Notes under the pieces: model-generated
The model's database searches: none
Seen by the model: the letters and a program-made list of their open reading frames with translations, nothing else
Told to the model about the DNA's origin: nothing
In this document: positions 11,742 to 54,348 of the stretch, piece by piece
How positions within the stretch are numbered: position 1 is the stretch's first letter
How the letters are laid out: each line of letters starts with the position of its first letter
Program-made: the position numbers and the translations under genes
DNA from: Octopus sinensis
Lineage: Eukaryota
Assembly: GCF_006345805.1 (NCBI RefSeq)
Contig: NC_043026.1
Location: 6,138,001-6,202,000 of the forward strand
Direction of reading: 5' to 3'
Length of the DNA stretch: 64,000 bases

Positions 11742-12051
11742 TAATGCTTCACTTACTTCTATAGTAGGACATCTCGTTGTTGTCCTGTCCACTGCTGACT
11801 GTCATAATACTTTTTGGTGAGTAATTCTTACAAGTACGGTTGACTTTGTTGTAAGAAAAGAATTCCGATTGACTGTTTAGAGCGATGAGAGAACATTCCA
11901 GAAGACTTCGGCTTGGGTAGAATTTCTCTGTTGGAGGAGTTTGAAGATAAGTATAGGAGTAACCAGGACCCAAAGAGTTGTAGAAGGCTTCATCAAATTC
12001 CTGATTCGAGGAAACGGTCAGAATCGTTGCAAGGATTAGAAGCAACAGCAT
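6534..12051 (-). CDS. Paralogue A: secreted protein, signal peptide + PAN/apple-like segment + uncharacterised C-terminal domain, 284 aa, 3' type T1
   Basis: Coding exons 12051-11757 (295 nt), 9635-9457 (179), 8392-8229 (164), 7568-7405 (164), 6586-6534 (53). All introns GT-AG with matching phases 1,0,2,1. AATAAA at 6434-6429. Starts [15 protein letters not shown] and ends ...AIFIRLRQN*. Confidence 0.88.
10500..11135 (+). mobile_element. 5'-truncated restriction-like-endonuclease (R4/Dong-like) LINE inserted in (TAA)n
   Basis: Frameshifted ORF LLWNFTIQTDRKIDANRPDI...LFIDMTVP...KLSKYKDL...IPVVIGALG, flanked on both sides by (TAA)n. Confidence 0.8.
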
Positions 12052-12130
12052 TTTTGGTTTTGACTGGAATGGGAGAAGAAAATTGGAACACTTTCGTTTT
12101 AGGATCATGAGAGAGTGTGAGAGAGAGTGG

Positions 12131-12162
<32 letters not shown>

Positions 12163-12659
12163 AGAGAGTGGGAATGTAGAGAGAGGGAGAGAGAGTGAGA
12201 GAGAGAGAGAGAGAGAGTGTGAGAGAGAGTGGGAGAGAGAGAGAGAGAGAGAGAGTGTGAGAGAGAGTGGGAGAGAGAGAGAGAAAGAGGAGTTAGTAAA
12301 AGTTGTCTTATAATGTTTTTTCACGAAACACACATCTCACCTCAAAGGAATTTACATAAAACAGAGAAAAAAACAACTCCCCACCCCCCAAAAAAACAAC
12401 GACAAAAGATAAACACATAAAGTGGCATAGCTGTGTGGTTAAGAAACTCACTAAGAAACTTTGGGGTTTTGAGTTCAGTCCCACTCCACAGCACCTTGGG
12501 CAAGTATTTTGACTCTAGCTCCAGGCCGAACAATGCCTTGTGAGTGGATTAGGCACACGGAGATTGTGTGTGGAATCCCATTGAATATATAAATAATAAA
12601 AATCACAATCTTATGCCCTTGAGCGAGACCAACGTGTTACCTGCTACACCATACAACAT

Positions 12660-12874
12660 TGGTTTTCAACCAGGGTTCCGCGGAACCTTAGGGTTCCGCT
12701 AGTACAGTCCAGGGATTCCGCAAAAAGTTACAAAACTGCTAAAATCGACAGTAATTTTTAATTCTCCTGTGCAGATATGTGTGCATAAAACTATTAAATT
12801 ATTGCACAGGGGTTCCTCAAGCTAGTGGAATGTTTCCTTGGGGTTCCACTCCAGCAAAATGTTTGAAAAGCACT
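12660..12874. mobile_element. hAT-like MITE with 8-bp TSD (CCATACAA); second copy at about 44226-44445
   Basis: CATTGGTTTTCAA...TTGAAAAGCACTG ends; absent at the homologous site upstream of B. Confidence 0.75.
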
Positions 12875-13001
12875 GCCATACAAGATAATCCCAAATCCAA
12901 GCCGCACACATAAAGACATAGACACACACACAGCATTCACACATGCACACACGCACACACACACACACAAAATAAGTGGGAGATTATAAAACAGCCCTTA
13001 C

Positions 13002-13260
13002 CTTTGCTGGTTGACGAAACAGGCAGCACCTATGAGTTTAGTGGTCACCTGAGGCACAGACGTCAGGACTGTCCCCTATTACTGTCCAGTAATGTCCACT
13101 GCTCGAACAACCGTCCACTTTTGTTAGTAATGTCCACAAATATAAAGACTGCCTTCAAATCTCAATATTATCCCCTGCTTCCAAAATCATGACAGAGGGC
13201 AGCACTCTCTTTGAATACCGGACTGTCTGTTGATAGCAACAATGATCCCAGCTGTAACCA
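13002..13260 (-). promoter_or_regulatory. Probable promoter / non-coding first exon of gene A (donor after 13002)
   Basis: CAAAG|GTAAGG donor in gene sense, conserved upstream of all four genes. Matching acceptor TTTTCTTCTCCCATTCCAG lies 12 nt before the signal-peptide ATG (exon start 12063). The 5' boundary is unknown. Confidence 0.55.
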
Positions 13261-13854
13261 ATGTCTAATGGTATGGAAACTGTCCATTAATGGTTGTTGG
13301 TATTAATATGGTTCACTCCAATGATTGTCCACTTAAAATATTGTTTCTGAACAGGAAACGAAAAGACCCGATGTTTGTCATGAATTTATTATAACAAACA
13401 TGTTTCATTGAACACGCTGGGTAGACGGAGAAGTGTGAGATCGATAAGGCACTCTTGGTGATGTTGTTGTTGTTGTGGTGGTGGTGGTGGTGTTAGTTGT
13501 TTGTGGTGGCTGCGATGGTGAATGTGGTGTTGTTGTTGTGGTTGGTGTTGTAGTGGTGATGGGGACTGGGGATTGTGGTGTTGCTGGGGTGGTGGCGGTG
13601 GCGGTGGTGGCGGTGGTGGTGGCGGTGGTGGCGGTGGTGGCGGTGGTGGCAGTGGTGGCGGAGGTGGTGGTGGTGGCGGCGGTGGTGGTGGTGGTGGCGG
13701 TGGCGGTGGCGGCGGCAGTGGCGGTTGGTGGCGGTGGTGGTTTAGGTGGTGGTGGTGGCGGCGGTGGTGGTGGTGGCGGTGGTGGCGGTGGTGGTGGTGG
13801 TGGTGGGGTGATGATGTTGGGGGGCATCATCATCATCATTGTTCGACCGTGGTC

Positions 13855-14640
13855 GAGACAATGGAATTTACCATGCTACGCCAGACCACACGGTCCATCA
13901 TGGCATTACAGAGGTCCTGTTGCTGGATGCCTGTATCCCTGGAGATTACATCAGGGTAGGAGAGTGTGCCCTCTGGTATTGCGAGTAGATGGCTTCCCAG
14001 GAGAAGACTAGAAAATTACTTCTTTTTCAGCTCTCAACAACATGTCCAGCAAACTGGACTCTCCTACCTTCACAAGAGATGACACAGGTGGTAGTTTCCC
14101 ATATATTTGCATTTTGGTTGGATGACGCTTCCACGAGAGATTTTGAGCTCTCATAAGGAGGCGAGTGTAGGTTCCATCAACCGCCTCTCAAGCTTCTTTG
14201 ATAACGTCCAGGTTTCTGAGCCATATTGTAGAATTGGTTTGACTGGTATCGTGAGCAGATGGCTTCCAGAGGAGAAGAGTAGAAATTACCTCTTTTTCAG
14301 CTCTACAACAATGTCCCGCAAACTGGACTCTCCTACCTTTCACAAGAGATGACACAGGTGGTAGTTTCCCATATATTTGCATTTTGGTTGGATGACGCTT
14401 CCACGAGAGATTTTGAGCTCTCATAAGGAGGCGAGTGTAGGTTCCATCAACCGCCTCTCAAGCTTCTTTGATAACGTCCAGGTTTCTGAGCCATATTGTA
14501 GAATTGGTTTGACTGGTATCGTGAGCAGATGGCTTCCAGAGGAGAAGACTAGAAATTACCTCGTTTTCAGCTCTACAACAATGTCCAGCAAACTGGACTC
14601 TCCTACCCTTCACAAGAGATGGCACAGGTGGTAGTTTCCC
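13855..14640 (-). mobile_element. RTE-clade LINE 3' fragment with internal 270-bp tandem duplication
   Basis: LLMRAQNLSWKRHPTKMQIYGKLPPVSSLVKGRRVQFAGHC... ending DRVVWRSMVNSIVSTTVEQ* followed by (TGA)n. Confidence 0.8.
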
Positions 14641-14765
14641 AAATATTTGCATTTTGGGAGCAGGGAAGCACTTGGCGATTGCTTTTGTTAAGAATGGAAT
14701 TAGAGGTGATCCGTAATTACAACACTTTGAAAACTGTCCACAAATATCAGCGCTGTGCCGAACCG

Positions 14766-16102
14766 CAAAAGAAACGCAAGACGTGCGTGACTGTGAAATA
14801 TGTTTTAATTTCATTATGTCTGTCAGAGATAAATTTTGATAAATCCGATAAAGTCAATTTCTTGGATGCACTTAGATTGTAGGGCGTGGCATGTTCAGTA
14901 ACGTGTATGCTCTCCCTGGGTGTTCAGAATGGCCATACACCGTTTGGTACATGAAATGCATGAGGCGGTTGACAAAAGCCATTGGCACTTGAGTCCAAAC
15001 CCTGAGGAAAGCTGCTTCCAGTTCCACACGAGTTGTTGGCCTTGGGACCACCTGGTTCAACCATCGCTGGATTTCATCCCACAGGTGTTCTATTGGGTTC
15101 TGATCCAAGCTGAGAGCCAGCCACGGCATGGTTCTGATGTTGTGCTGACGCAGGAAGTCCATGAGGACCCTTTCCGTGTTGGAGGCAGCATTGTCCTGTG
15201 GGAACACGTGGCTATGGTGACACACGAAGAAGGGCATGATGTGAGGTCTTAAGATCTGGTCAACATGGCGCTGTGCTGTGATGCCATTCCCTCTGCCTGC
15301 ACCAACATTTTGGAACATATGGAGCCCAATTCTCTGATGCAGGCCTATGGCACCCCAAACTATGATGCTTTAGCCATCTCATGTGTCTCTCTCCATGACA
15401 CGTGCATCTCTTTAGCGTCTACCCTTTCTACGCCACACCCTCACTCTATCATCCGAGGTGGAAATGCTGCACTGACTCTCGTCAGAGAAGACAATCAACC
15501 TCCATTGTTGATGCCACCAATGTCGGTGCTGTGTAGCCCACTGTAGTTGCGCCTAATGGTGGCAGGCAGTGAAGCCAGGCCCTCGATGATGGCAGGATGA
15601 CAGCAATGGAGGTTGTTCACAGCCAGTCGACGTCATACTGTATTGTCGCTGATGGGCCACTGTCCAGTGCCAATGGTCTCGCGAGCCATCACGCTGGCTG
15701 GTCTGAAGCGATCACGGTGGTGTTGCAGGCGGATGAAGCAATCCTGCCTGGGCGGGGTCACTTGAAAGTGCCCTCTACAAGCATGGTCTGCTGGGCTGTC
15801 GGTGTTGTTGCAGGCGATAGATGGTACTGACATGGACATTGTAAGCTTTCACAACAACCAAGCCATGCTGCTCTGTTTGCAAACGGCCGATAGCTTGTTC
15901 TCTTTGTGTTGCTGACAATCAGATCATACCAGATCGTCCAAATTACGAATGAATTCTTTATTGTCCGCAAATACAAACAAAAAACACAAAAGTGGGGAAA
16001 AAAACGAATGAGAAAAAAGATGACAAAAAAATTAATGAAGAGGTGGAATGATGCCACTTGAACCCTGCACTCCGAGTTACGTCATTGAATCTCTTTTGCA
16101 GT
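14766..16102 (-). mobile_element. Degenerate Tc1-like DNA transposon
   Basis: TPPRQDCFIRLQHHRDRFRPAS (HTH region) and QDNA...PW...DQNPIEHLWDE (DDE region) in broken frames. Confidence 0.82.
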
Positions 16103-16429
16103 CACTTTATCACATTTAAAACTATTTTTGTGGTTCTCTTTTAGAAAAAAGTTTTTCACCCTCATGTTATCCTTTAATAACATATAATTTTTAAAAACAC
16201 TATTTAATAATCAATAGGCGCAGGAGTGGCTGTGTGGTAAGTAGCTTGTTTACCAACCACATGGTTCTGGGTTCAGTCCCACTGCATGGCACCTTGGGCA
16301 AGTGTCTTCTGCTATAGCCTCGGGCTGACCAAAGCCTTGCGAGTGGATTTGGTAGACGGAAGCTGAAAGAAGCCTGTCGTATATATGTATATATATATGT
16401 GTGTGTGTGTTTGTCCCCCTAGCATTGCT

Positions 16430-17488
16430 TGACAACCGATGCTGGTGTGTCCATGTCCCCATTACTTAGCGGTTCGGCAAAAGAGACCGATAGAATAAGT
16501 ACTGGGCTTACAACAGAATAAGTCCCGGGATCGAGTTGCTCAATTAAAGGCGGTGCTCCAGCATGGCCGCAGTCAAAGGACTGAAACAAGTAAAAGAGTA
16601 AAGAGAGAGAGAGTTTGTTCAGTTCATCCTGATCGATGACTGGAGGTAGTAAATCAATCACCACCTTCTGGTCCAATGGGTTCACATCTGATCCAGATGC
16701 CTCCCTCAATCTCAGGTAACTCTGAGATGATTGTCCACTTGAAACGTTGTTTCCCAACAGAAAACAAAAGGACCCACGGTTTGTCGTAAAGTTATTGTAA
16801 CAAGGCATGTTTCTTTGAAAGCCGTGGGCAGATGGACAGCTGTGTGATCAATAAGGTATTGATGCTGTTGTTCAAGTGGTGGTTATTGTTGGTGGTGGTG
16901 GTGGTGGTGGTGGGGGAAGGTGTTGTTGATGGTGGTGGTGGTTTTTGTTGTAGAGAAAAGAGTTTTGCGTTTGTGAGGGGTGATGATGTTGGGGAGTAGG
17001 GGAGCGATTGCTTTTCTTAACCCTTTAGTGTTCAGATTATTCTATCAAACATAATGCTTATTGATTTGAATTAATCGTGCATTATCTCATATCTTCAAGA
17101 TCTTGATGGTGTAATTACTTAATGTAGAATAACATTGTAGGGTAGGTGTGAGGGCCTGGATCTGGTCAGTTTGAACATAAAACAGATTAACTATTTTGGC
17201 CGGTTTAAATACTAAAGGGTTAATGGAATTACAGGTAATCCGTAATTATAACAGTTTGAAAACTGTCCAGAAATGTCAGTACCATACCAATATTATCCAC
17301 TGCTTCCAAAACTGCAGCAGAGGTCATCACAGTCTTTGAATGCCGAGACAGAGGTTAGAATCTCCGACTGTCCACTGATAGCCTTTACAGTTGTGATTGT
17401 TCACTTATAGTATTAATTCTTAACTGGAAACAAAATGAACTTATTTTTGTTTTATGAAGCTATAAAGAAGACGCACTTCATTGAACAT

Positions 17489-17560
<72 letters not shown>
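16430..17560. repeat. Segment duplicated in inverted orientation at about 30430-31510
   Basis: The same piggyBac-like MITE and flanks appear as a reverse complement. Confidence 0.9.
17040..17222. mobile_element. piggyBac-like MITE (TTAA TSD); mirror copy at 30747-30950, related element at 39673-39900
   Basis: TTAA-CCCTTTAG...CTAAAGGG-TTAA. Confidence 0.75.
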
Positions 17561-17570
<10 letters not shown>

Positions 17571-17614
17571 CAGATAGATAGACAGATAGACAGATAGATA
17601 AAAGTAGATAGATG

Positions 17615-17649
<35 letters not shown>

Positions 17650-17656
17650 GATGATG

Positions 17657-17725
<69 letters not shown>

Positions 17726-17741
17726 ATAGATGGATAAATAG

Positions 17742-17772
<31 letters not shown>

Positions 17773-17864
17773 GATAGATAGATAGATAGACAGATACAGA
17801 TAGAGACAGATAGATAAATAGATAGATAGATGGATAGATAGATGGATAGATAGATAGATAGATA

Positions 17865-19400
17865 ACTTTTTTTATTAGCCACCAGGGCTGAATACAGAGG
17901 GGACAAAATACAAATGCAGAGCTTTTCTTTTCGAGGGTGGAGAAAAATAAAAAAAAGTAAGATTGCGATCAAAAGGGATCGAGAGGAGGGAAAAAAAGGA
18001 AAAAAGGAAAATCGTGTATCACAGAAATAATGGTGTAAACATTGATATAACAAGATTGGGTTCATCCGTGGGAAGAAAAGCCTACAGAAAAGACCACGGG
18101 AACCCCAGTCAGGGAGGAAAATAAACACATGAGGTCAAAAATGCTCTCTTTCTTTCTTTTTTACGATCTACAGGATCATGCTCAAAATGGTTTCGTTACT
18201 AGCACGCACCATCTTTGCAACATTCACCCATCTTTTTTGAATCTTTCGCGAGACACAAACTTCCCTCTCCATTCTCACCTTCCTTTTCAAGGGTACTTGA
18301 AAAAGTTGATGAGCGATTGGCAGAGAGGTAAGTGTTTGTCTCTAATCCTTTCGCTCGAGTCCACCACACACATTTTTTCACCATGGCCACCAGTACGATG
18401 AAAACTGCTTGCCTTCCCGGTTGAGGGAAGGGGGCGGAGCAGCAATTCTCACGATAGAACTCGGCCGATAGGCGATTCGTCCCACACGTGACAGCAGCCG
18501 TTCGGCATAAGCCCACAGGTCGGAAATGGTTGGACATTGCACGAGTGCGTGCAGAACGGTTTCGTCGCTCTGACCGCATCTCGGGCAAGTCGGTCCAGTG
18601 TGTCTGGAACCGTGTCTGTAGAGCTTATCCCGAACAGGTAATGCTTCTCGATAGCACTGCCAGGCCAGGGATCTTTGGTGATTGTTCATAGGTCCCGGCC
18701 GCCGAAAGTTGTCCTGAACAGGCGGGTCAGGTGTTCCTCGTCGACGCCCAGACTCTGCCCGAGTTCGTCGTTGCACCTCCCCTCCACTAATCCTCTATAG
18801 AATGCCTTTGTTGTGATGGAGTCGCACAAGTTCGATCCCGGACGGCAGAGTTGCTTGAGAGCAACGCGACACTCGCGGGCCATTCGCCTAGCCTCGGTCT
18901 CTGCTTGATCCATGACTGTAGTTCGTCCAAGGAGACGAGCTGCGGGAAAGCGCGCCGCACAAAAGGCGACCACCCCTGTTCACCGTTGTCTATGAAGCGC
19001 CGGAGATGTCGCGTCAGTCTCAGCGCATGTCTGCGCATCATCAACCACGGCATGCCCAGCCCTCCATTTAGCGGGTGTTGGCAGCAAATGGATCGCCTAA
19101 CCATCGGAACGTTTCCCTTCCACAAGAAGCGGAAGAGATGCGTTCGTTCCAGTTTGGTGATGGTAGGGTCGGGACAAGGCACGACGGTCAGACGATACTC
19201 GATGACGGATGCGATGTACGCGTTCGCCACCTCCGCCCGACCTTTTAGGGATAGCTTTCTCTCAGTCCATTTCTGGGTGAGAGTAGCCACCCTAGTCGTT
19301 ATCTCGCCCCAGTTCTTCTCCATTTGGAGGTCCGGACCGAACCAGACCCCGAGCAATTTAACCGGTCCGTCCGTCCAGCGTCCCACGATGGAGACGCTGC
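17865..19400 (-). mobile_element. 5'-truncated L1/Tx1-clade LINE inserted in (GATA)n; short 3'-end copies at 19505-19692(-) and 59577-59683(+)
   Basis: KLLGVWFG...KLSLKGRAEVAN...RFLWKG...GGLGMP and a zf-RVT-like CPRCGQSDETVLHALVQC; the 3' end AATAAAA(A)GAAAGTT abuts (ATCT)n. Confidence 0.85.
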
Positions 19401-19471
<71 letters not shown>

Positions 19472-19716
19472 CAGATTGATAGATAGATAGATAGATAGAT
19501 AGATAACTTTCTTTTATTAGCCACACAGGGCTGAATACAGAGGGGACAAATACAAATGCAGAGCTTTTCTTTTCGAGGGTGGAAAAAATAAAAAATGTAA
19601 GATTGCGATCAAAAGGGATCGAGGGGAGGAAAAAAAAGGAAAAAAAAAGAAAATCGTGTATCACAGAAATAATGGTGTAAACATTGATATAACATTGAGC
19701 AGTGGTTGAAGGGAAT

Positions 19717-19750
<34 letters not shown>

Positions 19751-20510
19751 GTTGTTATTGTCGTTCTTGGTGACGGCGGTGGTGTTAGTGGTATTAGTAG
19801 CATTGACGGCACGGTCTTTGGTGGTGGTGATGGTGATGTTGGTATTGTTATTGGTGGCGATGTCTTTAGCAGGGATAGCAGTTTTAGTAGCAGATGCTGC
19901 CATGGTGTTGTTGTCGGTGTTGGTGGTGGACTCACTGGTGGTGTTGACGGTGCTTGACCTTGCGACCTTTGTTTTATATTTGTTGCTGTTGTCGATGCTG
20001 ATGGTGGTGGTGGTGGTGGTGGTGGTGGTGAAAGCGGTGGTGGTAACAGTAGTATTCTCTTTGTTGTTCTTGTTAGTGGTGGTAGTGGTGACAGGGTTTT
20101 TACTACAAGTGGTTGCAGCGTTCATTGCAAATTCATTGATGATTTCACCTTCCGTGCATAAATTCTTTTTTTATCCTAGCGTTTCCAGTCTGGGAGAAAG
20201 CTGGTCGATAGAGGAACGCGACCATCGTTCTAAAATACAATTTCTTGACATTTTCAAAATGTCGAAAAGGAAATTACACAAATTAAATAGGGTTAAAACT
20301 GCCCCTAGGGGCGAATTCCTCCCTTAGAAAAGCACTCAAACGAAAGTTGGGTGCCTTACACAACTTATTTACAAAAATGTACACAAAAATTGGCCTATAA
20401 ATAGTCAAAATAAACGATTACATTCGGAGCTGAACTGACATCACGTCCGTCAATAAACAGATAGATAGATAGATAGATAGATAGACAGACAGACATATAG
20501 ATAGATAGAT

Positions 20511-20547
<37 letters not shown>

Positions 20548-20572
20548 CAGACAGACATATAGATAGATAGAT

Positions 20573-20635
<63 letters not shown>

Positions 20636-21099
20636 TATATATGGGTCCTTTTGTTTTCTGTTGGGTAATAATATCTGAAGTGAACAATCATCTCTGTGAA
20701 TGGTATGAATACCAGCGGCCTTTACTGGAGAGTTGTGGACAGTTTTCATATCATTGGACGTTAGTTACAGCAGGGATCATATGGTCGAAAATATGCCAGT
20801 AATGAAACATATGTGCACTCTTATGTCAATCCATGTAGGTTAAAGTAATAATTGTGTAAATATCCACCACCAACAAGACCCACCAACATTGCAACGAAAC
20901 CGACAATACCTTATTGATCACACAGCTGACCATCTACCCAGTGCGTTCAATGAAACGTGCCTTGTTACAATAACTTTACAACAAACCATGGGTCCTTTTG
21001 TTTTCTGTTGAGTAATAATATCTTAAGTGGGCAGTCGTCCGTGTGAATGGTATGGATACCAGTGGACATTACTGGACAGTCGTGGACAGTTTTCATATC

Positions 21100-21387
21100 A
21101 TTGGACGTTAGTTACAGCAGGGATCATTGTTGCTATCAACGGACAGTCCGAGAACCTGAGCTCTGTCTTGGTATTCAAAGAGAGTGCTGACCTCTGTCAT
21201 AATTTTGGAAGCAGGGGATAATATTGAGATTTGAAGGCAGTCTTTATATTTGTGGACATTACTAATAAAAGTGGACGGTTGTTCGAGCAGTGGACATTAC
21301 TGGACAGTAATAGGGGACAGTCCTGACGTCTGTGCCTCAGGTGACCACTAAACTCATAGGTGCTGCCTGTTTCATCAACCAACAAAG
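21100..21387 (+). promoter_or_regulatory. Probable promoter / non-coding first exon of gene B
   Basis: Donor CAAAG|GTAAGG at 21387/21388; acceptor at 22387/22388 gives a 1000-nt intron. Confidence 0.55.
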
Positions 21388-21539
21388 GTAAGGGCTGTTT
21401 CATAATCTCCCACTTATTTTGTGTGTTTGTGTGCCCGTCTGTGTGTGTGTGTGTGTGCATGTGTGTATGTGTGTGTGCATGTGTGTATGTGTGAGAGAGA
21501 GGGAGAGTCTGTATGTGTGTGAGTGCTGTGTGTGTTAGT

Positions 21540-42946: not shown

Positions 42947-42981
<35 letters not shown>

Positions 42982-44880: not shown

Positions 44881-45116
44881 GCCACTGGTATTCATACTAT
44901 TCACAGAGATGATTGTTCACTCAAGATATTATAACCCAACAGAAAACAAAAGGACCCATGGTTTGTTGTAAAGTTATTGTAACAAGGCACGTTTCATTGA
45001 ACGCACTGGGTAGATGGACAGCTCTGTGATCAATAAGGTAATGTTTGTTTTGTTATAATTTTGGTGGTGGAGATAGTATTGTTGTGGTATATAGTTGTAT
45101 ATAGTTGTCTAAGAAT

Positions 45117-45177
<61 letters not shown>

Positions 45178-46087
45178 TATACAGGGGTTGGACAAAATAA
45201 TGGAACACCTAGCATCATAATTTTGAAATATCTATGAAACCGTCAAAAGCTTGTTTATTTTTATGTTTTTTGATTTGTTATTAGTGTTGACTGTCCGTTG
45301 ATAGCTGCTATGATCCCTGCTGTAACTAACGTCCAATGATATGAAAACTGTCCACAACTCTCCAGTAAAGGCCACTGGTATTCATACCGTTCACACGGAT
45401 GATTGTTCACTTACGATATTATTACCCAACAGAAAACAAAAGGACCCATGGAAACTGTCCACAACTGTCCAGTAAAGGCTGCTGGTGTTGATACGGTTCA
45501 CACTCATAATTTTCCAGTTCAAATACTCTTTTGTACTCTAGATAGATTTTTTAATTGAATTATCGGTGATTCTTAATTATAACAATTTAAATAAGCCCAC
45601 ACATACGGACACATTTACATACACACACACATATGTATTTTAATGGGTTTTTTTTTACATATATCATTGAACTATTGCATACACATGCACTAACATGCAT
45701 GCATCGTGTCCTTGAGGCCTTTGATGCAAACGTCAAAAAGGACTCACCTGACAAACACATCAAAGGCATGTCAGAACCAGCAGGTAAGAATTCTCATTTG
45801 CACCTATTGTCAAAGGTGCATTAGGTTATGTACCAACGAGTTTACACAAAAACCAAGAAATATTCGGTTTCATGGAGGAAGAGCAAAAGAAACTGATATG
45901 GATTCTCCAATGTATTTAATATAGGCGCAGGAGTGGCTGTGTGGTAAGTAGCTTGCTAACCAACCACATGGTTCCAGGTTCAGTCCCACTGCGTGGCATC
46001 TTGGGCAAGTGTCTTCTGCTATAGCCCCAGGGCCGACCAATGCCTTGTGAGTGGATTTGGTAGACGGAAACTGAAAGAAGCTCGTCG

Positions 46088-46125
<38 letters not shown>

Positions 46126-46224
46126 CGTGTGTGTGTTTGTGTGTCTGTGTTTGTCCCCCTAGCATTGCTTGACAAATGATGCTGGTGTGTTTACGTCCCC
46201 GTCACTTAGCGGTTTGGCAAAAGA

Positions 46225-46867
46225 GACTGATAGAATAAGTACTGGGCTTACAAAGAATAAGTCCCGGGGTCGATTTGCTCGACTAAAGGCGGTGCTCCAG
46301 CATGGCCACAGTCAAATGACTGAAACAAGTAAAAGAGTACAAGAGTAAATCTAGTTTATTAGTGGCACAGTGAAGATCTGTAAAACATTCCAAAGATTAT
46401 CCATCAGAGGTTCTTATGTGAATAGATGTATACATTTGGATGTACACATTGACAGTTCAACCAAAACACAAACCCAACCACATATTCACAGACACTGGGA
46501 AATCTTTTAAGTCAAAAAGTCCAATCAATGGCACAGTGAAGATCTGTAAGACATTGCAAAAATTCTGCATCTGAGATTCTTATGTGAATAGATGCCCACA
46601 CTCTGCAAACTTAAAGGTTTTTTTCACTTTGTTAGAGACCGGCTTCAATTTTCTCAAGATGAACTTCAATTAAGCTCAAAGAAAAATCATACATACATAG
46701 ATGCATACATGTATATATATGTATACATACATACATTCATACATACATACACACAAACATATATACATTCATACATATATACATAGATACATGCATGCAT
46801 GCATACATACATACATGCATGCATGCATACATACATACATACCTACATACATACATACATACATTAT

Positions 46868-46900
<33 letters not shown>

Positions 46901-47100
46901 ATATATAAAATCAAAATTACCAACGGGATATCAAGAGTAATGCAGTACGACCGTTTCAAGCAGCTCCGTTTAATTAAACAATGCAATCATTACATCAAGT
47001 TAAATGCAATGCCATCTTCAGCTGCACAAATAAATAAATGGAATTTTAACAAGTAGGACACATTAATATCATTTTTCCTAAATATTTTAACAGAGCTAAA
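46225..47100. repeat. Segment duplicated in inverted orientation at about 31517-32345
   Basis: GCCATCTTCAGCTGCACAAATAAATAAATGG..., the (ATAC)n tract and the SINE end all match as reverse complement. Confidence 0.9.
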
Positions 47101-48348
47101 AGATGGAAGAAATCCATTTTGTTGCTATTGTAGCTAAGAATAGACTACAACGTCTAAGAATTGAATGGGGCATTGTGGGGTCATAGGGTCGTAAGGGTTG
47201 TAAATCATTTCTAACTCATTTATCTCTTTATCAACTACTAAATCTAAGACTAGGACACGATGGCTGTGTTGAATAAAGGACAAGAGGAATTGACAGCTCA
47301 TGGCTAGGTTTGGTCATAAATATTATCATATGTATCCCTTTATATGATATTGAATGTCCCATAACCGGGTTTTTGTCTCTTGAAGAAAGGACAGTTTCCT
47401 CTGAGGGGACAAAGAGAAAAGAATTGATTGCCGCAACTTCAGAGGAATCTCTTGGTGAATATAATTGGGAAGGTCTTCGGTCGTAAGGTCCTAACCAGTT
47501 TGTAGAAAAGCGTCGAAAGGGTAAACCCTGAATAAACTGACTAAATCAGCAACAATGAGGTATTGAATTGCAGGCTGCATCTTCATCCGACGGCAACAAC
47601 GTTTCCTCCGATGCTTGCAACTCGTACATTGCATATCTGATGGGAGGATCGCAAAAGAACCCCCTCTATGGGGAACTGCACTCCATTAAAAACCCATTTT
47701 CTCAGGATGTGTGGCTGGCAAGAAATGAGGATGAAACTTCTAACCTTTATGATCACGGTGGAGTCCTTAAATAACTGATCATAAACATTAAATGGCGGTG
47801 CCCCAGCATGGCCACAGCTAGTGAGCTGAAACTAGATAAATAAAAAAAAAATTAAAAATAAAAAATTATTCGTGTGGGCGTGAGTGGAAAATTTACAAAT
47901 GGGTAAAAATCTACAATATCGAATGGGGTACCATTACTCTATCCCTAAAGAGATTGGCTTTGTACAGTCACCGGAAGTAACTTGCACGGACACCGGAAAT
48001 TCATCTGCCATCACCAGAGAAAACAAAGCAACTACCCCCAGCGACTTGCCTGACCTTTCATTGGACAAAAGCTACCTACCTGCCATTCTATTGGACACTG
48101 ACTAAACATCACTGCTGATATTTTTGTATAAATAGACATCATAAATCGCTGTAAAACCAGTTGGCTTTTTGGCACTCGACCGATGTAAATCGTGTCCCTC
48201 TCGCCTGCCACGCTCGCCACTCACGGCGCCTCGAACCTTTGTACTGCTATTTCACGCCTGAAATAAATCCATGTATAAACTTACACCTCTTGTCTGCTCG
48301 TCCTTTCAACTACTGCTTTCGTCTGTCCAGTTTTGCTGATTACGACCA

Positions 48349-48740
48349 CAGTCCTTTTCAGGGCTAATTCAAGTCTGATCTGAATGCGATAACAGTCCTT
48401 TTTAGGACTATTCTTAGATCGGATCTAATTGCGATAACCGTCCTTTTAAGGGCTACCCTTGAATGCGATAACAGTCCTTTTAGGACTACTCTCAGATCCG
48501 ATCTAATTGCGATAACCGTCCTTTTAAGGGCTACCCTTGAATGCAATAACAGTCCTTTTTAGGACTATTCTTGGATCGGATCTAATTGCGATAACAGTCC
48601 TTTTAAGGGCTACCCTCGAATGCAATAACAGTCCTTTTTAGGACTATTCTTGGATTGGATCTAATTGCGATAACCATCCTTTTAAGGGCTACCCTTGAAT
48701 GCAATAACAGTCCTTTTTAGGACTACCCTCAGATCAGACC
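48349..48740. repeat. Higher-order tandem repeat of alternating about 45- and about 33-bp related units
   Basis: CAGTCCTTTTTAGGACTATTCTTRGATCGGATCTAATTGCGATAAC alternating with CGTCCTTTTAAGGGCTACCCTTGAATGCRATAA. Confidence 0.92.
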
Positions 48741-48789
48741 AGAAGTAGTGGCCAAGAATTATACCCGCTACAGCTTTATACCATGTGAT

Positions 48790-49090
48790 AGGGAAGATGC
48801 GTGGCTTAGCGGTTCGTGTATCTCGCTCATGATCATAAGGTCGAGTGTTCGATTCCCAGGGCTGCATTGCGTCCTTGAGCAAGACACTTTAATTCATGTT
48901 ACTGCAGTTGAATCAGCTGGCAGAAATAAGTAGTACCTGTAATTCACAAGGGGCCAGCCTTGTTACATTCTATGTCATGCTGAATCTCCTTCACAAATAC
49001 GTTAATGGTATGCACGTCTGTGGAGTACTCAACCACTTGCAAGTTAATTGCACGAACAGAGTTTTCCTTTGATCAGATCAACTGGAATCG
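48790..49090 (+). mobile_element. Further tRNA-like SINE; similar reverse copies at about 3270-3500 and 40660-40985
   Basis: GTGGCTTAGCGGTT...GTTCGATTCCCAGGGCTG...TCCTTGAGCAAGACACTT. Confidence 0.6.
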
Positions 49091-49099
49091 ACTTAGTGC

Positions 49100-49704
49100 C
49101 AGGATAAATCATAAGATGACCCTCCCCCCACTGATATTGCGCCAAAGATAGTAGTGGTTTTCAGATTGGGGCCCTCTCGTGAAATCTGGCTTTGTGCAGC
49201 TCCTAGCAAACAGTTTTTGTGGAAACTGGGTTCTCAAAGTGGTCATTAAGCTCTGCAGTAATTTTGGGAGCTGTACTTTTGTGATCCTTTCTAGCAATTC
49301 ACGTAAGAGTCCGACAGTCCCTATCTGAAAGTTTTGGTTTTCTTCCAGAGTTCTGTTTCAACGAGGAGGTTTTTCCCTCTTTCTCAGAGGCTGTCATTAC
49401 TTTCATGACGGTACTTCTTGATACACCAAACATTTCGGCTGTTTTCATTACACTAGCGCCTGCCATACGAGCACCAGCAATTTGTCCTCTTTGAAAGTCC
49501 AATAGATCTGTCATTTTAATGAATTTTAATTATCTTTTTCTGATATCTGAAAAGAAACAGCAATTTTAGCGAAACATATTAAGCAACACTAATAATAAAT
49601 AAAAAAACTTAAAAATAAACAAGCTTTTGACAGTTTTATAGATATTTCAAAATTATGATGCTATGATGCTAGGTGTTTCCATTATTTTGTCCAACCCCTG
49701 TATA
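49100..49704 (-). mobile_element. 5' part of a Tc1-like transposon; its terminal about 110 bp is also at 45180-45290(+)
   Basis: DFQRGQIAGARMAGAS...FGVSRSTV...NSGRKPKLSDRD; terminus TA-CAGGGGTTGGACAAAATAATGG. Confidence 0.8.
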
Positions 49705-49745
49705 TGTGTATATATATATATATGATGATGATGATGATGATGTAT

Positions 49746-49776
<31 letters not shown>

Positions 49777-50039
49777 GGATTCTTAGACAACTATATACAG
49801 AATGATATAGACACTATATACAACTATATACCACAACAATACTACCTCCACCACCAAAATTACAACAATACCTTATTGATCACAGAGCTGTCCATCTACC
49901 CAGTGCGTTCAATGAAACGTGCCTTGGTACAATAACTTTACAACAAACCATGGGTCCTTTTGTTTTCTGTTGGGTTATAATATCTTGAGTGAACAATCAT
50001 CTCTGTGAATAGTATGAATACCAGTGGCCTTTACTGGAC

Positions 50040-50349
50040 AATTGTGGACAGTTTTCATATCATTGGACGTTAGTTACAGCAGGGATCATAGCTGCTATCA
50101 GCGGTCAGTCCGAGAACCTGAGCTCTGTCTTGGTATTCAAAGAGAGTGCTGACCTCTGTCATAATTTTGGAAGCAGGGGATAATATTGAGATTTGTAGGC
50201 AGTCTTTATATTTGTGGACATTACTAATAAAAGTGGACAGTTGTTCGAGCAGTGGACATTACTGGACAGTAATAGGGGACAGTCCTGACGTCTGTGCCTC
50301 AGTTGACCACTAAACTCATAGGTGCTGCCTGTTTCGTCAACCAACAAAG
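50040..50349 (+). promoter_or_regulatory. Probable promoter / non-coding first exon of gene D
   Basis: Same donor at 50349/50350; acceptor at 54023/54024 (3.7-kb intron). An in-frame TAA upstream of the junction makes the exon non-coding. Confidence 0.55.
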
Positions 50350-50406
50350 GTAAGGGCTATTTTATAATCTCCCACTTACTTTGTGTGTGTGTGTATGTTT
50401 GTGTGC

Positions 50407-50438
<32 letters not shown>

Positions 50439-50507
50439 ATGTGTGTATGTGTGTGTGCATGTGTGTATGCGTGAGAGAGAGAGGGAGAGTCTGTATGTGT
50501 GTGAGTG

Positions 50508-50547
<40 letters not shown>

Positions 50548-50901
50548 ATGTGTGTATGTGTGAGAGAGAGGGAGAGTCTGTATGTGTGTGAGTGCTGTGT
50601 GTGTGTGTGTGTGTGAGTTCATCTATGTCCATGTGTGTGTTTGTGCATATGTAAAGTGTTAGAGTTGGGGTCACGGTGTAGGGGTTTAACTGATAAAGTG
50701 CTGGGTTCGCTCACGGTCATAAGCTTATGGTTTCCGAATCAAGCAATGCATTGTGCTCTTGAGCAAGGTTCTTCGTTTCCACCGTACTTCACTCCACTCA
50801 CCTGAAAACTAATTACAAGTGATAACTGGAGGAATGTCCACTCCCGTGAAGGACTGGTGTCCTGTACAACAGGTGACCTTCACAAGGCAGTCTTCTAATC
50901 T

Positions 50902-51136
50902 TCTTTCTTTACTACCCATAAGGGGCTAAACACAGAGGGGACAAACAAGGACAGACAAAGGGATTAAGTCGATTACATCGACCTCAGTGCATAACTGGTA
51001 CTTATTTAATCAACCCTGAAAGGATGAAAAGTAAAGTAGACCTCGGCGGAATTCGAACTCAGAACGTAGCAGCAGACGAAATACCGCTCAGCATTTTGCC
51101 CGGTGTGCTAACGTTTCTGCCAGCTTGCCGCCTTTC
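50902..51136 (-). mobile_element. Third SINE family, flanked by TCTTCTAATCT direct repeats
   Basis: Reverse strand GGCGGCAAGCTGGCAGAAACGTTAGC...GAGTTCGAATTCC tRNA-like head. Confidence 0.75.
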
Positions 51137-52595
51137 TCTTCTAATCTTTAGTCTTCTAATCTTTAGTCTTCTAATCTTTAGTCTTCTAATCTTTAGTCTT
51201 CTAATCTTTAGTCTTCTAATCTTGGTCTTCTAATCTTTAGTCTTCTAATCTTTAGTCTTCTAATCTTTAGTCTTCTAATCTTGGTCTTCTAATCTTTAGT
51301 CTTCTAATCTTTAGTCTTCTAATCTTTAGTCTTCTAATCTTGGTCTTCTAATCTTTAGTCTTCTAATCTTTAGTCTTCTAATCTTGGTCTTCTAATCTTT
51401 AGTCTTCTAATCTTTAGTCTTCTAATCTTGGTCTTCTAATCTTGGTCTTCTAATCTTTAGTCTTCTAATCTTTAGTCTTCTAATCTTTAGTCTTCTAATC
51501 TTTAGTCTTCTAATCTTGGTCTTCTAATCTTGGTCTTCTAATCTTTAGTCTTCTAATCTTTAGTCTTCTAATCTTGGTCTTCTAATCTTTAGTCTTCTAA
51601 TCTTTAGTCTTCTAATCTTTAGTCTTCTAATCTTTAGTCTTCTAATCTTTAGTCTTCTAATCTTTAGTCTTCTAATCTTGGTCTTCTAATCTTTAGTCTT
51701 CTAATCTTTAGTCTTCTAATCTTTAGTCTTCTAATCTTTAGTCTTCTAATCTTTAGTCTTCTAATCTTGGTCTTTTAATCTTTAGTCTTCTAATCTTTAG
51801 TCTTCTAATCTTAGTCTTCTAATCTTTAGTCTTCTAATCTTGGTCTTCTAATCTTTAGTCTTCTAATCTTTAGTCTTCTAATCTTTAGTCTTCTAATCTT
51901 TAGTCTTCTAATCTTGGTCTTCTAATCTTTAGTCTTCTAATCTTTAGTCTTCTAATCTTTAGTCTTCTAATCTTGGTCTTCTAATCTTTAGTCTTCTAAT
52001 CTTTAGTCTTCTAATCTTGGTCTTCTAATCTTTAGTCTTCTAATCTTTAGTCTTCTAATCTTGGTCTTCTAATCTTGGTCTTCTAATCTTTAGTCTTCTA
52101 ATCTTTAGTCTTCTAATCTTTAGTCTTCTAATCTTTAGTCTTCTAATCTTGGTCTTCTAATCTTGGTCTTCTAATCTTTAGTCTTCTAATCTTTAGTCTT
52201 CTAATCTGGTCTTCTAATCTTTAGTCTTCTAATCTTTAGTCTTCTAATCTTTAGTCTTCTAATCTTTAGTCTTCTAATCTTTAGTCTTCTAATCTTTAGT
52301 CTTCTAATCTTGGTCTTCTAATCTTTAGTCTTCTAATCTTTAGTCTCCTAATCTTTAGTCTTCTAATCTTTAGTCTTCTAATCTTTAGTCTTCTAATCTT
52401 GGTCTTTTAATCTTTAGTCTTCTAATCTTTAGTCTTCTAATCTTTAGTCTTCTAATCTTTAGTCTTCTAATCTTTAGTCTTCTAATCTTGGTCTTTTAAT
52501 CTTTAGTCTTCTAATCTTTAGTCTTCTAATCTTTAGTCTTCTAATCTTGGTCTTTTAATCTTTAGTCTTCTAATCTTTAGTCTTCTAAACTTGGT
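51137..52595. repeat. Minisatellite of about 100 units: TCTTCTAATCTTTAG (15 nt) interspersed with TCTTCTAATCTTGG (14 nt)
   Basis: Direct inspection. Confidence 0.97.
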
Positions 52596-52959
52596 CACTT
52601 CTAAACTCTTCAGAAACCAGAAGAAGCTCAGGCCTCCTGGGCCTGGAGGCTTCGGACAGACTTTAACTGAAAATTTATGATGCATCCACCTGGAAAGATG
52701 AGAGAAAATATTTCTTTTCGTTTAGCCCTAGGCTGGTTGTGATTGAGCAGATCTATAATCGAAGCCGTTCCGGCCGTAACCATCTCATCGTTTTATTCAG
52801 AAATATGGTTGCTATGACAACATCCTCATGTTGTTACTGTTGTTGTTGTTGTTGCTGTCATCATCCGCGGCATCTTCTTGTTTTGCATCAGATCAGGCCT
52901 TTGCTCCAAGACGTTCCAGCTGTGACCACCCCGTGGCTGTGTGCTTAGTAAGTCTCAAT

Positions 52960-53119
52960 TCCAATGTTTGTGATGCATATGCTTGGTGTACCCATATCAG
53001 ACGGGTAGCCACGATGGATATAAAGGGCTTCGTATATTTGTACCCGAGTGTCACTTTGATGGCATCCGCTGCTCAATAATAATAATAATAATAATAACAA
53101 TAATAATAATAATAATATA

Positions 53120-53154
<35 letters not shown>

Positions 53155-53710
53155 CCTGATGCAGTACCAGGCAGTGGCTCTCATGGCTTCTGATCTTAAC
53201 TGATTGGAAGTGTTATCATGTACATTGTTTTGTCTTGGTATAAAAGATGGGCTACAGCAAATATTTGCTCAATACCACAGATTTGCTTGTCAGTTGTTTG
53301 ACCTTAACCAGTTGAGCATGTCCCTTAGTGGCTGACGATATGTGCATCTCTGATCACGAGCAGAAGTAGTGGGGGAGCATCATAGCCATGTGTTGAGAAG
53401 GATTCTTTGGGGTTTGAATAATTCACCTCTGGAAACATGGGTGTTTCGTTCAACGTCCTTAACACACCCTATTCAGGGACCTTTTGAGCGGGATGGGTTA
53501 CTCGATCTGAAGAAAATTCTAACTGGGCTCCACCTGCAAGGTCATTTGCTGCTTATCTTGATATGAGATCACCATGTCGCGCACATATGGTTGTGATGCA
53601 TGTGCCTGGTGTACCCTTATCAGACGGGTAGTCATGATGGGTATACTGGGCTTCGTATATTTTACCCCAGTGTCACTTTGATGGCATGCTCTGCTCGCTC
53701 ACTCAATAAT
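52960..53710 (+). mobile_element. Non-coding retroposons with (TAA)n tails (short copy 52960-53074, longer copy 53152-53705)
   Basis: Two related 3' ends ...GTGTCACTTTGATGGCAT...CTCAATAATAAT. Confidence 0.55.
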
Positions 53711-54035
53711 AATAATAATAATAATAGAACTAATCACATCAACTTACAAAGGGGTCAGAGTAGTGATTCGTCCCTTTGAAGGATGTGGGACAGCAGAAAC
53801 GCTACAATTTCACACAAAGTGAGTTTAGCAAACTGACCCAAAACTTGTAATTTATTCTTCTTGTTTTTCTTTTCATATACATTTCATACACTTCTCCCTC
53901 TCTCTTTCTTTCTCTCTCTCTCTCTCTGCCTCTCTCTCTCTCTCTCTGCCTCTCTCTTTCTCTTTCTCTCTCTCTCTGATGATCCTAAAACGAAAGTGTT
54001 CCAATTTACTTCTCCCATTCCAGTCAAAACCAAAA

Positions 54036-54348
54036 ATGCTGTTGCTTCTAATCCTTGCAACGATTCTGACCGTTTCCTCGAATCAGGAATTCGATGAAGC
54101 CTTCTACAAATTTTTGGGTCCTGGTTATTCCTATACTTATCTCCAGACTCCTCCAACAGAGAAATTCTACCCAAGCCGAAGTCTTCTGGAATGTTCTCTC
54201 ATCGCTCTAAACAGTCAATCGGAATTCTTTACTTACAACAAAGTCAACCGTACTTGTAAAAATTACTCACCCAAAAATATTATGACAGTCAGCAGTGGAC
54301 AGGACAAGAATGAGATGTCCTACTATAGAAGTAAGTGAAGCATTATTA

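What the first reader, a model, noticed from the sequence alone, without database searches (positions are those of the whole stretch)
12051..54330. All three possible pairings occur along the gene: a 2x2 shuffle of 5' regions and 3' halves, consistent with an invertible spacer between head-to-head genes
Seen: (i) First-exon region pairs A=B and C=D (GGTCACCTGAGG vs GGTCAACTGAGG; GCCTTCAAAT vs GCCTACAAAT; GATAGCAACAATG vs GATAGCAGCTATG). (ii) First intron pairs A=C (shared hAT MITE and CA-tract) and B=D (shared GAGAGGGAGAGTCTGTATGTGTGTGAGTGCTG tract at about 21490 and 50480). (iii) Intron 1 and exons 3-4 pair A=D and B=C. So A=P1T1, B=P2T2, C=P1T2 and D=P2T1: every combination once. Inference: near-identical exon 1 copies facing outward act as inverted repeats. 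A crossover in them flips the roughly 10-kb spacer and swaps 5' regions between T1 and T2 bodies, and the two head-to-head pairs preserve the two orientations. If this is recurrent, it is a recombinational expression/diversification switch in an animal gene cluster; if it happened once, it is a fixed historical inversion.
Basis: partly seen in the sequence, partly recalled or inferred. Interest (0 to 1): 0.8.

Follow-up and report, generated by a model that had tools for sequence, protein, structure and literature searches.

The report
Mosaic four-gene palindrome in octopus
Four copies of an octopus-only secreted-protein gene sit as two head-to-head pairs in a mirror-image block, and their front ends are a real patchwork of one another, best explained by ordinary copy-and-paste recombination between repeats; nothing shows a working DNA switch.

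Summary
Site patterns switch from AB|CD in the upstream block, to AC|BD in the putative first intron, to AD|BC from mid exon 2 onward (heterogeneity p about 2e-20).

The locus holds two old paralog types. T1 is copies A and D; T2 is copies B and C. They differ by 18-33% in exons 4-5. The family is octopod-specific, secreted and probably PAN/apple-like. A head-to-head T1/T2 pair was duplicated in inverted order about 2-3% divergence ago. The 5' modules and exon 6 of all four genes have since been homogenised to 1-4%.

The tidy 2x2 shuffle is too simple:
- A and B are not near-identical in the upstream block (24% apart in the distal half). That split reflects C=D (1.9%).
- The AC|BD signal is a patch of at least 0.3 kb and at most about 1.6 kb.
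- A B=C marker (U') lies on the spacer side of that patch.
- The two spacers share no unique sequence that would reveal their relative orientation.

I favour patchy non-allelic gene conversion (0.6) over a fixed historical inversion (0.25). An active switch is unsupported (0.05) and cannot be tested without reads.

The assembly gap lies in gene C between two redundant, indel-ridden contig ends, far from the mosaic.

The parts
6532..12051 (-). Gene A (type T1). Coding exons 12051-11757, 9635-9457, 8392-8229, 7568-7405 and 6586-6532. Intact 284-aa ORF.
   Evidence: tblastn with octopus homolog P0002. AG/GT at every junction and an open frame.
22400..27403 (+). Gene B (type T2). Exons 22400-22694, 23289-23467, 24847-25010, 25941-26113 and 27328-27403. 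Intact 294-aa ORF.
33820..43328 (-). Gene C (type T2). Exons 43328-43034 and 42660-42482. Exons 4-6 are present twice, in the units 39696-36806 and 36705-33703 on either side of the gap. Each unit carries frameshifts or a stop.
   Evidence: The units differ by 45 substitutions and 102 indels, which points to an unmerged contig overlap rather than a true tandem duplication.
54036..61530 (+). Gene D (type T1). Exons 54036-54330, 56114-56292, 59044-59207, 60239-60402 and 61455-61530. Intact 291-aa ORF.
12990..13480 (-). The distal half, 13221-13480, is 24% diverged from B, C and D.
   Evidence: A 68-bp core is conserved at 78% about 840 bp upstream of the ATG exon of a distant paralog.
20880..21400 (+). 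Upstream block U of B.
44550..45289 (-). Upstream block U of C. It is 1.9% from D in the distal half.
49584..50360 (+). Upstream block U of D.
20641..20781 (+). U' of B: a partial tandem copy of U on the spacer side. It shares private states with U' of C.
45309..45449 (-). U' of C.
12656..12875 (-). hAT-type MITE in A (220 bp, 8-bp TSD TTGTATGG).
   Evidence: High-copy family, with other copies at most 96% identical. Its nearest relative is the C copy (4 mismatches).
44224..44443 (-). The same MITE insertion in C.
21855..21866 (+). Empty MITE site in B (ATCGTGTATGG|TGTAGCAGG).
21440..21535 (+). B copy of the B/D-specific tract that contains the genome-unique 32-mer.
50420..50604 (+). D copy of the same tract, tandemly doubled.
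21536..21813 (+). B-specific 278-bp high-copy interspersed repeat inserted in the TG tract.
50660..53889 (+). D-specific replacement of the first-intron sequence. It includes a 15-bp minisatellite of about 99 copies at 51137-52592.
43517..43877 (-). C-specific SINE-like insertion in the first intron.
13481..20640 (.). A-B spacer. It holds low-complexity tracts, a Tc1/mariner transposase remnant (14872-15369, -), a SINE (16214-16605), a U-like fragment (16724-16864) and a non-LTR reverse-transcriptase remnant (18378-19608, -).
45450..49583 (.). C-D spacer. It is mostly unique sequence plus a SINE at 45921-46345.
36706..36805 (.). Assembly gap between two redundant units of gene C.

Best explanation
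The window holds a young inverted segmental duplication. Its arms run from about 5380 to 27840 and from 33400 to 63825. The duplicated unit was a head-to-head pair of two old paralogs of an octopod-specific secreted protein family. The result is four genes in the order T1(A)<- ->T2(B) ... T2(C)<- ->T1(D).

Two parts of all four genes are being homogenised by non-allelic homologous recombination:
- the 5' module, which runs from upstream block U through the 0.8-1 kb 'first intron' and the ATG exon into exon 3;
- the 3' end, which is exon 6 plus the 3'UTR.

This happens mostly through short non-reciprocal conversion tracts. Partners include the head-to-head neighbour and also copies in the other pair. 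Patches with different partners and different ages overlap, so each of the three possible pairings dominates somewhere:
- C=D in distal U and the ATG exon;
- A=C and B=D in a short patch around the TG tract and MITE, where indels block further conversion;
- A=D and B=C wherever T1 and T2 are too diverged to recombine (exons 4-5).

Shown: the gene order, the divergence table, the markers and the intact ORFs. Inferred: the order of events, and that conversion rather than crossover produced the AC|BD patch.
For: - Segment table. Exon 4: A-D 0%, B-C 3%, T1-T2 18-20%. Exon 5: 1.2%, 1.8% and 30-33%. Proximal U, the intron 3' part and the ATG exon are 1-4% for every pair. Exon 6 is 3-6% for every pair.
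- The homology between the arms stops at the gene ends.
- Exchange between the two pairs is needed anyway. A, B and C are within 0.9-1.4% of each other over 345 bp of intron, closer than the 1.75-5% between A and D in the bodies.
- C is itself a patchwork: B-like at U', D-like in U, A-like at the MITE, A/D-like in the first half of exon 3, and B-like afterwards.
- U', on the spacer side of the AC|BD patch, pairs B with C.
- A 165-bp T1-type intron-3/exon-4 junction is embedded in intron 5 of B between duplicated ends of a repeat, and is absent from C. This is an independent templated ectopic patch.
- In the best-studied palindrome, conversions outnumber inversions 56 to 3 (PMC3723533).
Against: - The AC|BD patch looks reciprocal: C has the A state and D has the B state at the tract. 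Non-reciprocal conversion then needs two events, at least one of them between copies about 30 kb apart. One crossover-type exchange within a pair would do it in a single step.
- A-C divergence in the patch (1.2-1.8%) is about the same as the divergence between the arms, as a swap at or soon after the duplication would predict.
- The U' argument rests on one 141-bp marker whose absence from A and D could be secondary.
- The assembly is indel-error-prone near contig ends, and short-read polishing could mimic some homogenisation.
Confidence: 0.6

Rival explanations
1. A fixed historical inversion. After the inverted duplication, one intrachromatid crossover occurred between the inverted 5' modules of one pair, within or just upstream of the ATG exon. 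It flipped the whole inter-gene segment and swapped the 5' modules between the T1 and T2 bodies. Later conversion within each pair overwrote most of the AC|BD signal, leaving it only in the indel-rich patch. A variant is two such crossovers, which swap only the patch and restore the orientation.
For: - Reciprocity of the patch: MITE without tract in A and C, tract without MITE in B, tract in D.
- The pattern changes to AD|BC inside the ATG exon, between A positions 12079 and 11800.
- A-C divergence in the intron (1.2-1.8%) is comparable with A-D divergence in the bodies.
- The inverted modules offer 173-188 bp of exact identity.
- Spacer inversions are common between primate species in X-chromosome palindromes (PMC8327919).
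- Weak hint: the locus-specific spacer pieces at 16428-17652 and 46221-47101 both have inverted copies lying side by side in the centre at 30316-32351. This would fit the two spacers being in direct orientation.
Against: - U', next to the spacer, pairs B with C.
- No unique homology between the spacers exists to show their orientation.
- Distal U pairs C with D, and A with nothing.
- The single-flip version needs several later conversions anyway.
- The two-flip version cannot be told apart from a conversion patch using one haplotype.
Confidence: 0.25
2. A recurrent or active recombinational switch. The spacer flips repeatedly, in the germ line as a polymorphism or somatically, re-pairing promoters and 5' modules with T1 or T2 coding bodies.
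For: Only permissive evidence. There are inverted homologous modules flanking spacers of 4-7 kb, and three of the four genes have intact ORFs.
Against: - A single haplotype gives no information on recurrence.
- The two modules of a pair are 1-4% alike, and what they would swap is mostly near-identical sequence.
- No intact recombinase lies nearby. The only candidates are a Tc1 transposase fragment and an RT fragment.
- Another head-to-head pair of the family has no homogenised 5' module.
- The O. bimaculoides homolog has no head-to-head partner within 10 kb.
Confidence: 0.05
3. An assembly artefact. The mosaic, or the whole four-gene mirror structure, comes from mis-joined contigs, haplotype switches or mis-polishing among near-identical paralogs.
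For: - One gap with redundant, indel-ridden flanks lies inside gene C.
- The 5' modules are similar enough for short reads to mis-map.
Against: - A, the spacer, B, the centre and the 3' end of C lie on one gap-free stretch (1-36705). C and D lie on another (36806-64000). Each head-to-head pair and the B/C inverted arms are therefore seen without crossing the gap.
- The overlapping ends agree in orientation.
- The key markers are 50-220-bp structural differences, not single bases.
- Arm divergence of 2-3% with private TE insertions is not what haplotype copies would show.
Confidence: 0.07

Closest known systems
Primate X/Y-chromosome palindromes: arm-to-arm gene conversion with occasional spacer inversion (Rozen 2003, from my own knowledge; Hallast 2013 PMC3723533; Jackson 2021 PMC8327919)
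   Same: Both have inverted duplicated arms carrying a gene family. Both show concerted evolution by non-allelic conversion. In both, NAHR within one chromatid can invert the spacer, and rearrangements concentrate near the centre.
   Different: - The arms here are only 97-98% alike, not above 99.9%.
- The block is small (about 58 kb) and autosome-like. It sits in a cephalopod and is nested, with two small head-to-head inverted repeats inside a larger mirror duplication.
- Homogenisation covers only the gene ends, not whole arms.
FLNA-EMD (Xq28) polymorphic and recurrent inversion between 11-kb inverted repeats (Small 1997; Caceres 2007; both from my own knowledge, the first cited in PMC8327919)
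   Same: An inter-repeat segment of some kilobases is flanked by inverted paralogous sequence that can flip by NAHR without harm.
   Different: There, both orientations have been observed in populations and across species. Here, only one haplotype is available and the orientation cannot even be scored.
Concerted evolution and mosaic paralogs by interlocus gene conversion in tandem or inverted gene families (for example globin, opsin, MHC and CYP21/C4 clusters; from my own knowledge)
   Same: Conversion tracts are short and overlapping with shifting partners. Conversion stops at heterology such as TE insertions. Divergent cores are flanked by homogenised ends.
   Different: The gene family is new and uncharacterised. 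Both the 5' module and the last exon are homogenised, while exons 4-5 stay 18-33% apart.
Prokaryotic invertible-DNA switches (fimS, hin, shufflons)
   Same: Only the idea is shared: an inversion re-pairs regulatory and coding parts.
   Different: Here there is no site-specific recombinase, no short recombination sites and no evidence of two orientations. Any exchange would go through general homologous recombination.

Membership tests
Palindrome / inverted segmental duplication with arm-to-arm gene conversion | Two arms in inverted orientation with colinear homology around a centre | tested here: met
   Colinear inverted matches pair A with D and B with C from about 5380 to 63825. There are none beyond that range.
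Palindrome / inverted segmental duplication with arm-to-arm gene conversion | Sequence exchange between arms or paralogs, seen as mosaic site patterns | tested here: met
   Pattern heterogeneity has p = 2e-20. C is a patchwork of B-, D- and A-like segments.
Palindrome / inverted segmental duplication with arm-to-arm gene conversion | Arm identity above 99%, as in sex-chromosome palindromes | tested here: not met
   A-D substitution divergence is 1.75-5% in the bodies. B-C is 1.8-3% in exons.
NAHR-mediated spacer inversion (FLNA-EMD type) | Inverted homologous repeats flanking the segment | tested here: met
   A 12655-12174 versus B 21861-22344 is 96.7% identical. C 43474-43017 versus D 53889-54347 is 95.4% identical. 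Exact shared runs reach 188 and 173 bp.
NAHR-mediated spacer inversion (FLNA-EMD type) | The segment is seen in both orientations, between the two pairs, between individuals or between species | tested here: inconclusive
   The spacers share only a SINE and U-like fragments, so orientation cannot be scored. The U' marker favours the unflipped pairing. No reads or orthologous assembly were available.
Programmed invertible DNA switch | A dedicated recombinase and short specific sites | tested here: not met
   An ORF scan of both spacers found only a Tc1/mariner transposase fragment and an RT fragment. The repeats are 0.5-2 kb gene modules.
Programmed invertible DNA switch | Both orientations coexist in one organism | not testable with these tools
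   No read data are available.
hAT-type MITE | Terminal inverted repeats, an 8-bp target-site duplication, no coding capacity and high copy number | tested here: met
   The element has CAGTGCTTTTCAAAC ... GGTTGAAAACCAATG ends and the TSD TTGTATGG, with an empty site in B. About 1900 candidate copies exist, with the best at 95-96% identity. Assignment to the hAT superfamily rests on TSD length only.
PAN/apple-domain secreted proteins | Pfam PAN model above threshold, or a confident structural match | tested here: inconclusive
   No Pfam hit for the window's exons. PAN_3 scores E = 0.097 in one homolog. The AlphaFold model of homolog P0002 has pLDDT 62. Foldseek matches the HGF N domain and the plasminogen PAp domain over 80-90 residues at E of 1e-2 to 1e-3.

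The most novel reading that the evidence does not exclude
The inverted 5' modules of each head-to-head pair could mediate recurrent inversion of the 4-7 kb inter-gene segment, either as a germ-line polymorphism or somatically. The promoter and first-intron module would then be re-paired with the T1 or the T2 coding body. This would be a homologous-recombination 'shufflon' in a lineage-specific cephalopod gene family.
Probability: 0.05. Interest if true: 0.8.

Novelty: new member of a known kind. Interest (0 to 1): 0.3.

Why it matters
The locus is a compact, well-resolved case of concerted evolution. Two paralogs are 18-33% diverged in their middle exons yet keep nearly identical 5' and 3' ends. 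They sit nested inside a young mirror duplication in a cephalopod genome, within an octopod-only secreted protein family of unknown function that has at least 40 copies.

It could serve two uses:
- measuring the conversion-to-crossover ratio outside mammals;
- asking why only the gene ends are homogenised, for example through shared regulation or signal-peptide constraints.

It does not, on present evidence, reveal a new kind of genetic switch. It also flags a probable false duplication in the reference assembly, which makes gene C look broken.

Tried and rejected
- Pfam and PDB sequence searches of single exons found nothing.
- Pfam on ten homologs gave only sub-threshold hits.
- A global MAFFT alignment of the whole 5' regions forced D's non-homologous intron onto the others. 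I dropped it in favour of per-segment alignments.
- I tried to orient the two spacers by homology. Only a SINE (84-92% identical, typical of random copies of that family) and U-like fragments are shared.
- I tested whether the spacer pieces 16650-17450 and 46360-46820 are ordinary repeats. They are not: full-length copies exist only inside this locus. Their meaning for orientation stays ambiguous.
- I checked whether homogenised 5' modules are a family-wide trait of head-to-head pairs. The pair at C30:501 kb/512 kb shares only the exon at 74%.
- I looked at the O. bimaculoides homolog locus. It has no head-to-head partner and no inverted repeat of 250 bp or more in 30 kb. Orthology is uncertain.
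- My first gene model, with an 'exon 5' at 7353-7269 and a stop there, was wrong. The homologs showed a missed exon 4 and the true last exon.
- I did not look up the spliced window proteins in other assemblies, because that would have meant typing long sequences.
- Diversifying selection as a driver is rejected. dN/dS between T1 and T2 is about 0.5 in exons 4-5 and 0.3 in exons 2-3.

Full report
WHAT IS THERE

The window is G000:C30:6138001-6202000 of a 2.72-Gb animal genome in 13,516 contigs. It contains four paralogous genes.
- A is on the - strand, with ATG at 12051.
- B is on the + strand, with ATG at 22400.
- C is on the - strand, with ATG at 43328.
- D is on the + strand, with ATG at 54036.

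A and B are head-to-head, as are C and D. B and C are tail-to-tail.

A search of 1.84 billion representative proteins with the ATG exon found 16 relatives. Those with names are uncharacterised proteins of Octopus bimaculoides, O. vulgaris and Argonauta hians. That species identification is an inference.

The full-length homologs let me define five coding exons per gene. A, B and D have open frames of 284, 294 and 291 codons with AG/GT at every junction. The proteins have a signal peptide. No Pfam family reaches threshold. An AlphaFold model of a homolog (pLDDT 62) weakly matches PAN/apple domains over its first 80-90 mature residues. The ATG exon has at least 40 copies in the genome, mostly at C30:0-0.72 Mb.

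THE GAP

The N run at 36706-36805 lies inside gene C. Its flanks (34079-36705 and 37052-39696) are a direct repeat, and each flank carries exons 4-5 of C. An exon-6-like stretch abuts the gap on one side. The two units differ by 45 substitutions but 102 indel openings, and each carries different frameshifts. Indel-dominated difference at contig ends is what unmerged overlapping ends of a noisy long-read assembly look like. So the duplication, and the apparent breakage of C, are probably artefacts.

The gap is at least 5 kb from every marker of the finding. Each head-to-head pair, and the inverted B/C arms, lie on gap-free sequence.

THE OBSERVATION

I aligned homologous segments of the four copies separately and counted the three possible two-by-two site patterns.
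- Distal upstream block U: AB|CD 9, AC|BD 1, AD|BC 0.
- Proximal U and the 5' half of the ATG exon: AB|CD 2 each, no other pattern.
- Exon 3 region: AD|BC 13, AC|BD 2.
- Exon 4: AD|BC 29.
- Exon 5: AD|BC 47.
- Exon 6 region: AD|BC 5, AB|CD 1.

The heterogeneity between the 5' and 3' parts is extreme (chi-square p = 2e-20, Fisher p = 4e-15).

AC|BD is carried by structure rather than single sites.
- A and C hold the same 220-bp MITE at the same site with the same 8-bp duplication. B has the intact empty site.
- The MITE belongs to a high-copy family whose other members are at most 96% identical. The A and C copies differ at 4 positions.
- B and D share a composite tract whose 32-mer core occurs nowhere else in the genome.

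So all three pairings are real.

Pairwise divergences show that A and B are not near-identical in 'exon 1'. In distal U, A is 24% from B, C and D. B is 10% from C and D. C and D are 1.9% apart. The AB|CD split is therefore really 'C equals D'.

In proximal U, in the 3' part of the 'first intron' and in the ATG exon, every pair is within 1-4%. A, B and C are within 0.9-1.4% over 345 bp.

D's 'intron' from 50660 to 53889 is unrelated sequence that includes a 99-copy 15-bp minisatellite. So B=D rests on about 70-120 bp.

'Exon 1' is unproven. U has a 68-bp core conserved near a distant paralog, but there is no transcript evidence. The O. bimaculoides coding sequence starts inside the ATG exon.

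HISTORY

T1 (A, D) and T2 (B, C) are old paralogs. They are 18-20% apart in exon 4 and 30-33% apart in exon 5. Synonymous divergence (dS) there is 0.53 and dN/dS is about 0.5. By contrast, A-D and B-C are 0-3% apart in the same exons. Colinear inverted homology between A and D and between B and C stops at the gene ends. This is a recent inverted duplication of a T1/T2 head-to-head pair.

Both gene ends are homogenised across T1 and T2. These are the 5' module down to exon 3, and exon 6 plus the 3'UTR. Gene C shows this directly:
- its U' is B-like;
- its U is D-like;
- its MITE patch is A-like;
- the first half of its exon 3 is A/D-like, while B differs at 35 private sites;
- the rest is B-like.

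A further independent trace of templated ectopic repair lies in intron 5 of B. It is a 165-bp T1-type intron-3/exon-4 junction, 97% identical to D. It sits between duplicated ends of an interspersed repeat and is absent from C.

CONVERSION OR INVERSION?

A single crossover between the inverted 5' modules of one pair would flip the spacer and swap everything on its spacer side. That would explain the reciprocal look of the patch: C has the A state and D has the B state. The site pattern does change to AD|BC inside the ATG exon. A-C divergence in the patch (1.2-1.8%) is also similar to the divergence between the arms.

Against a single flip:
- U' lies between U and the spacer. It is present in B and C with shared private substitutions, and absent from A and D. 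The AC|BD patch is therefore bounded on both sides, at 0.3 kb or more and about 1.6 kb or less.
- The spacers share nothing that can orient them.
- Several conversions, including ones between the pairs, are required under any model.

Two crossovers would give the same picture as a conversion patch. In human Y palindrome P6, conversions outnumber inversions 56 to 3. Spacer inversions are, however, common between primate species in X palindromes.

I therefore put about 0.6 on conversion-dominated patchwork, 0.25 on a fixed historical crossover or inversion, 0.05 on recurrent or active flipping and 0.07 on artefact.

Nothing in one haplotype speaks to a switch. No intact recombinase is nearby. 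Another head-to-head pair of the family lacks a homogenised module. The O. bimaculoides homolog has no head-to-head partner within 10 kb.

COMPARISON AND VERDICT

The locus works like the known class of inverted duplications and palindromes that evolve by non-allelic gene conversion with occasional spacer inversion. It meets the structural criteria. It does not reach the above-99% arm identity of sex-chromosome palindromes. It fails the criteria for a programmed invertible switch.

It is a new member of a known kind, in an uncharacterised cephalopod gene family. Interest is modest (0.3). Long reads from a few animals would settle the remaining question.

Noticed in passing
window 34079-36705 and 37052-39696 (flanks of the gap at 36706-36805): Two direct 2.65-kb units differ by 45 substitutions but 102 indels. 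Each carries exons 4-5 of gene C with different frameshifts or a stop. This is probably an unmerged contig overlap, a false duplication that makes C look like a pseudogene.
   Followed up: yes
window 26545-26710 (intron 5 of gene B): A 165-bp T1-type piece sits between duplicated ends of an interspersed repeat. It comprises the end of intron 3 plus the first ~80 bp of exon 4, and is 97% identical to D 59008-59122. It is absent from both C units. It looks like an ectopic templated repair or conversion patch.
   Followed up: yes
window 30316-31520 and 31521-32351 (centre, between the 3' ends of B and C): Two adjacent segments are inverted copies of pieces of the two head-to-head spacers. One matches 16428-17652 at 93%. 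The other matches 46221-47101, at 98% over the first 600 bp. Each begins inside a SINE tail. Full-length copies exist only in this locus. The origin is unexplained: it could be 3' transduction, template switching at palindrome formation, or a relic spacer.
   Followed up: partly
window 13221-13480: The distal upstream block of gene A is 24% diverged from the same block of B, C and D. The adjacent proximal block is only 2-4% diverged. The change is abrupt, suggesting replacement or conversion from a more distant donor.
   Followed up: partly
window 6383-6600, 27314-27537, 33703-33926, 61441-61664: Exon 6 plus the start of the 3'UTR is only 3-6% diverged among all four genes. Exons 4-5 just upstream are 18-33% diverged between T1 and T2. 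So the 3' end is homogenised as well as the 5' end.
   Followed up: partly
window 6532-6534 versus 27401-27403 and 61528-61530: Gene A ends at a TAA. The same codon is CAA in B and TTA in C and D, so those genes read 7-10 codons further (…RQNQPIPVYV, …[10 protein letters not shown]).
   Followed up: no
window 14872-15369 (-) and 18378-19608 (-): The A-B spacer holds degenerate transposable-element ORFs: a Tc1/mariner-type transposase fragment and a non-LTR reverse-transcriptase C-terminal fragment. I named these from the look of the translated ORFs, not from a family search.
   Followed up: no
window 51137-52592: A 15-bp minisatellite (TCTTCTAATCTTTAG) of about 99 copies, with 93% matches, lies in the D-specific replacement of the first intron.
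   Followed up: partly
window 4280-4686, 5546-5937, 16214-16605, 23899-24291, 24455-24812, 36171-36572, 39167-39566, 41853-42252, 43512-43877, 45921-46345, 63242-63632: A SINE-like element of about 400 bp has at least 11 full copies at 84-95% identity in 64 kb. Several copies sit at rearrangement edges.
   Followed up: no
L005 (C30:715 kb) versus L006 (C30:501 kb): Two distant family members with 1.5-kb flanks are 98.9% identical over 3.3 kb. This is another recent segmental duplication within the main cluster of the family.
   Followed up: no
window 9261-9388 and homologous positions in B and in paralog L011: A block of about 128 bp just downstream of exon 3 is conserved at 75-77% in a distant paralog, as well as the exons are. 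It has no usable reading frame or splice sites. It may be a regulatory or alternative-exon element.
   Followed up: partly
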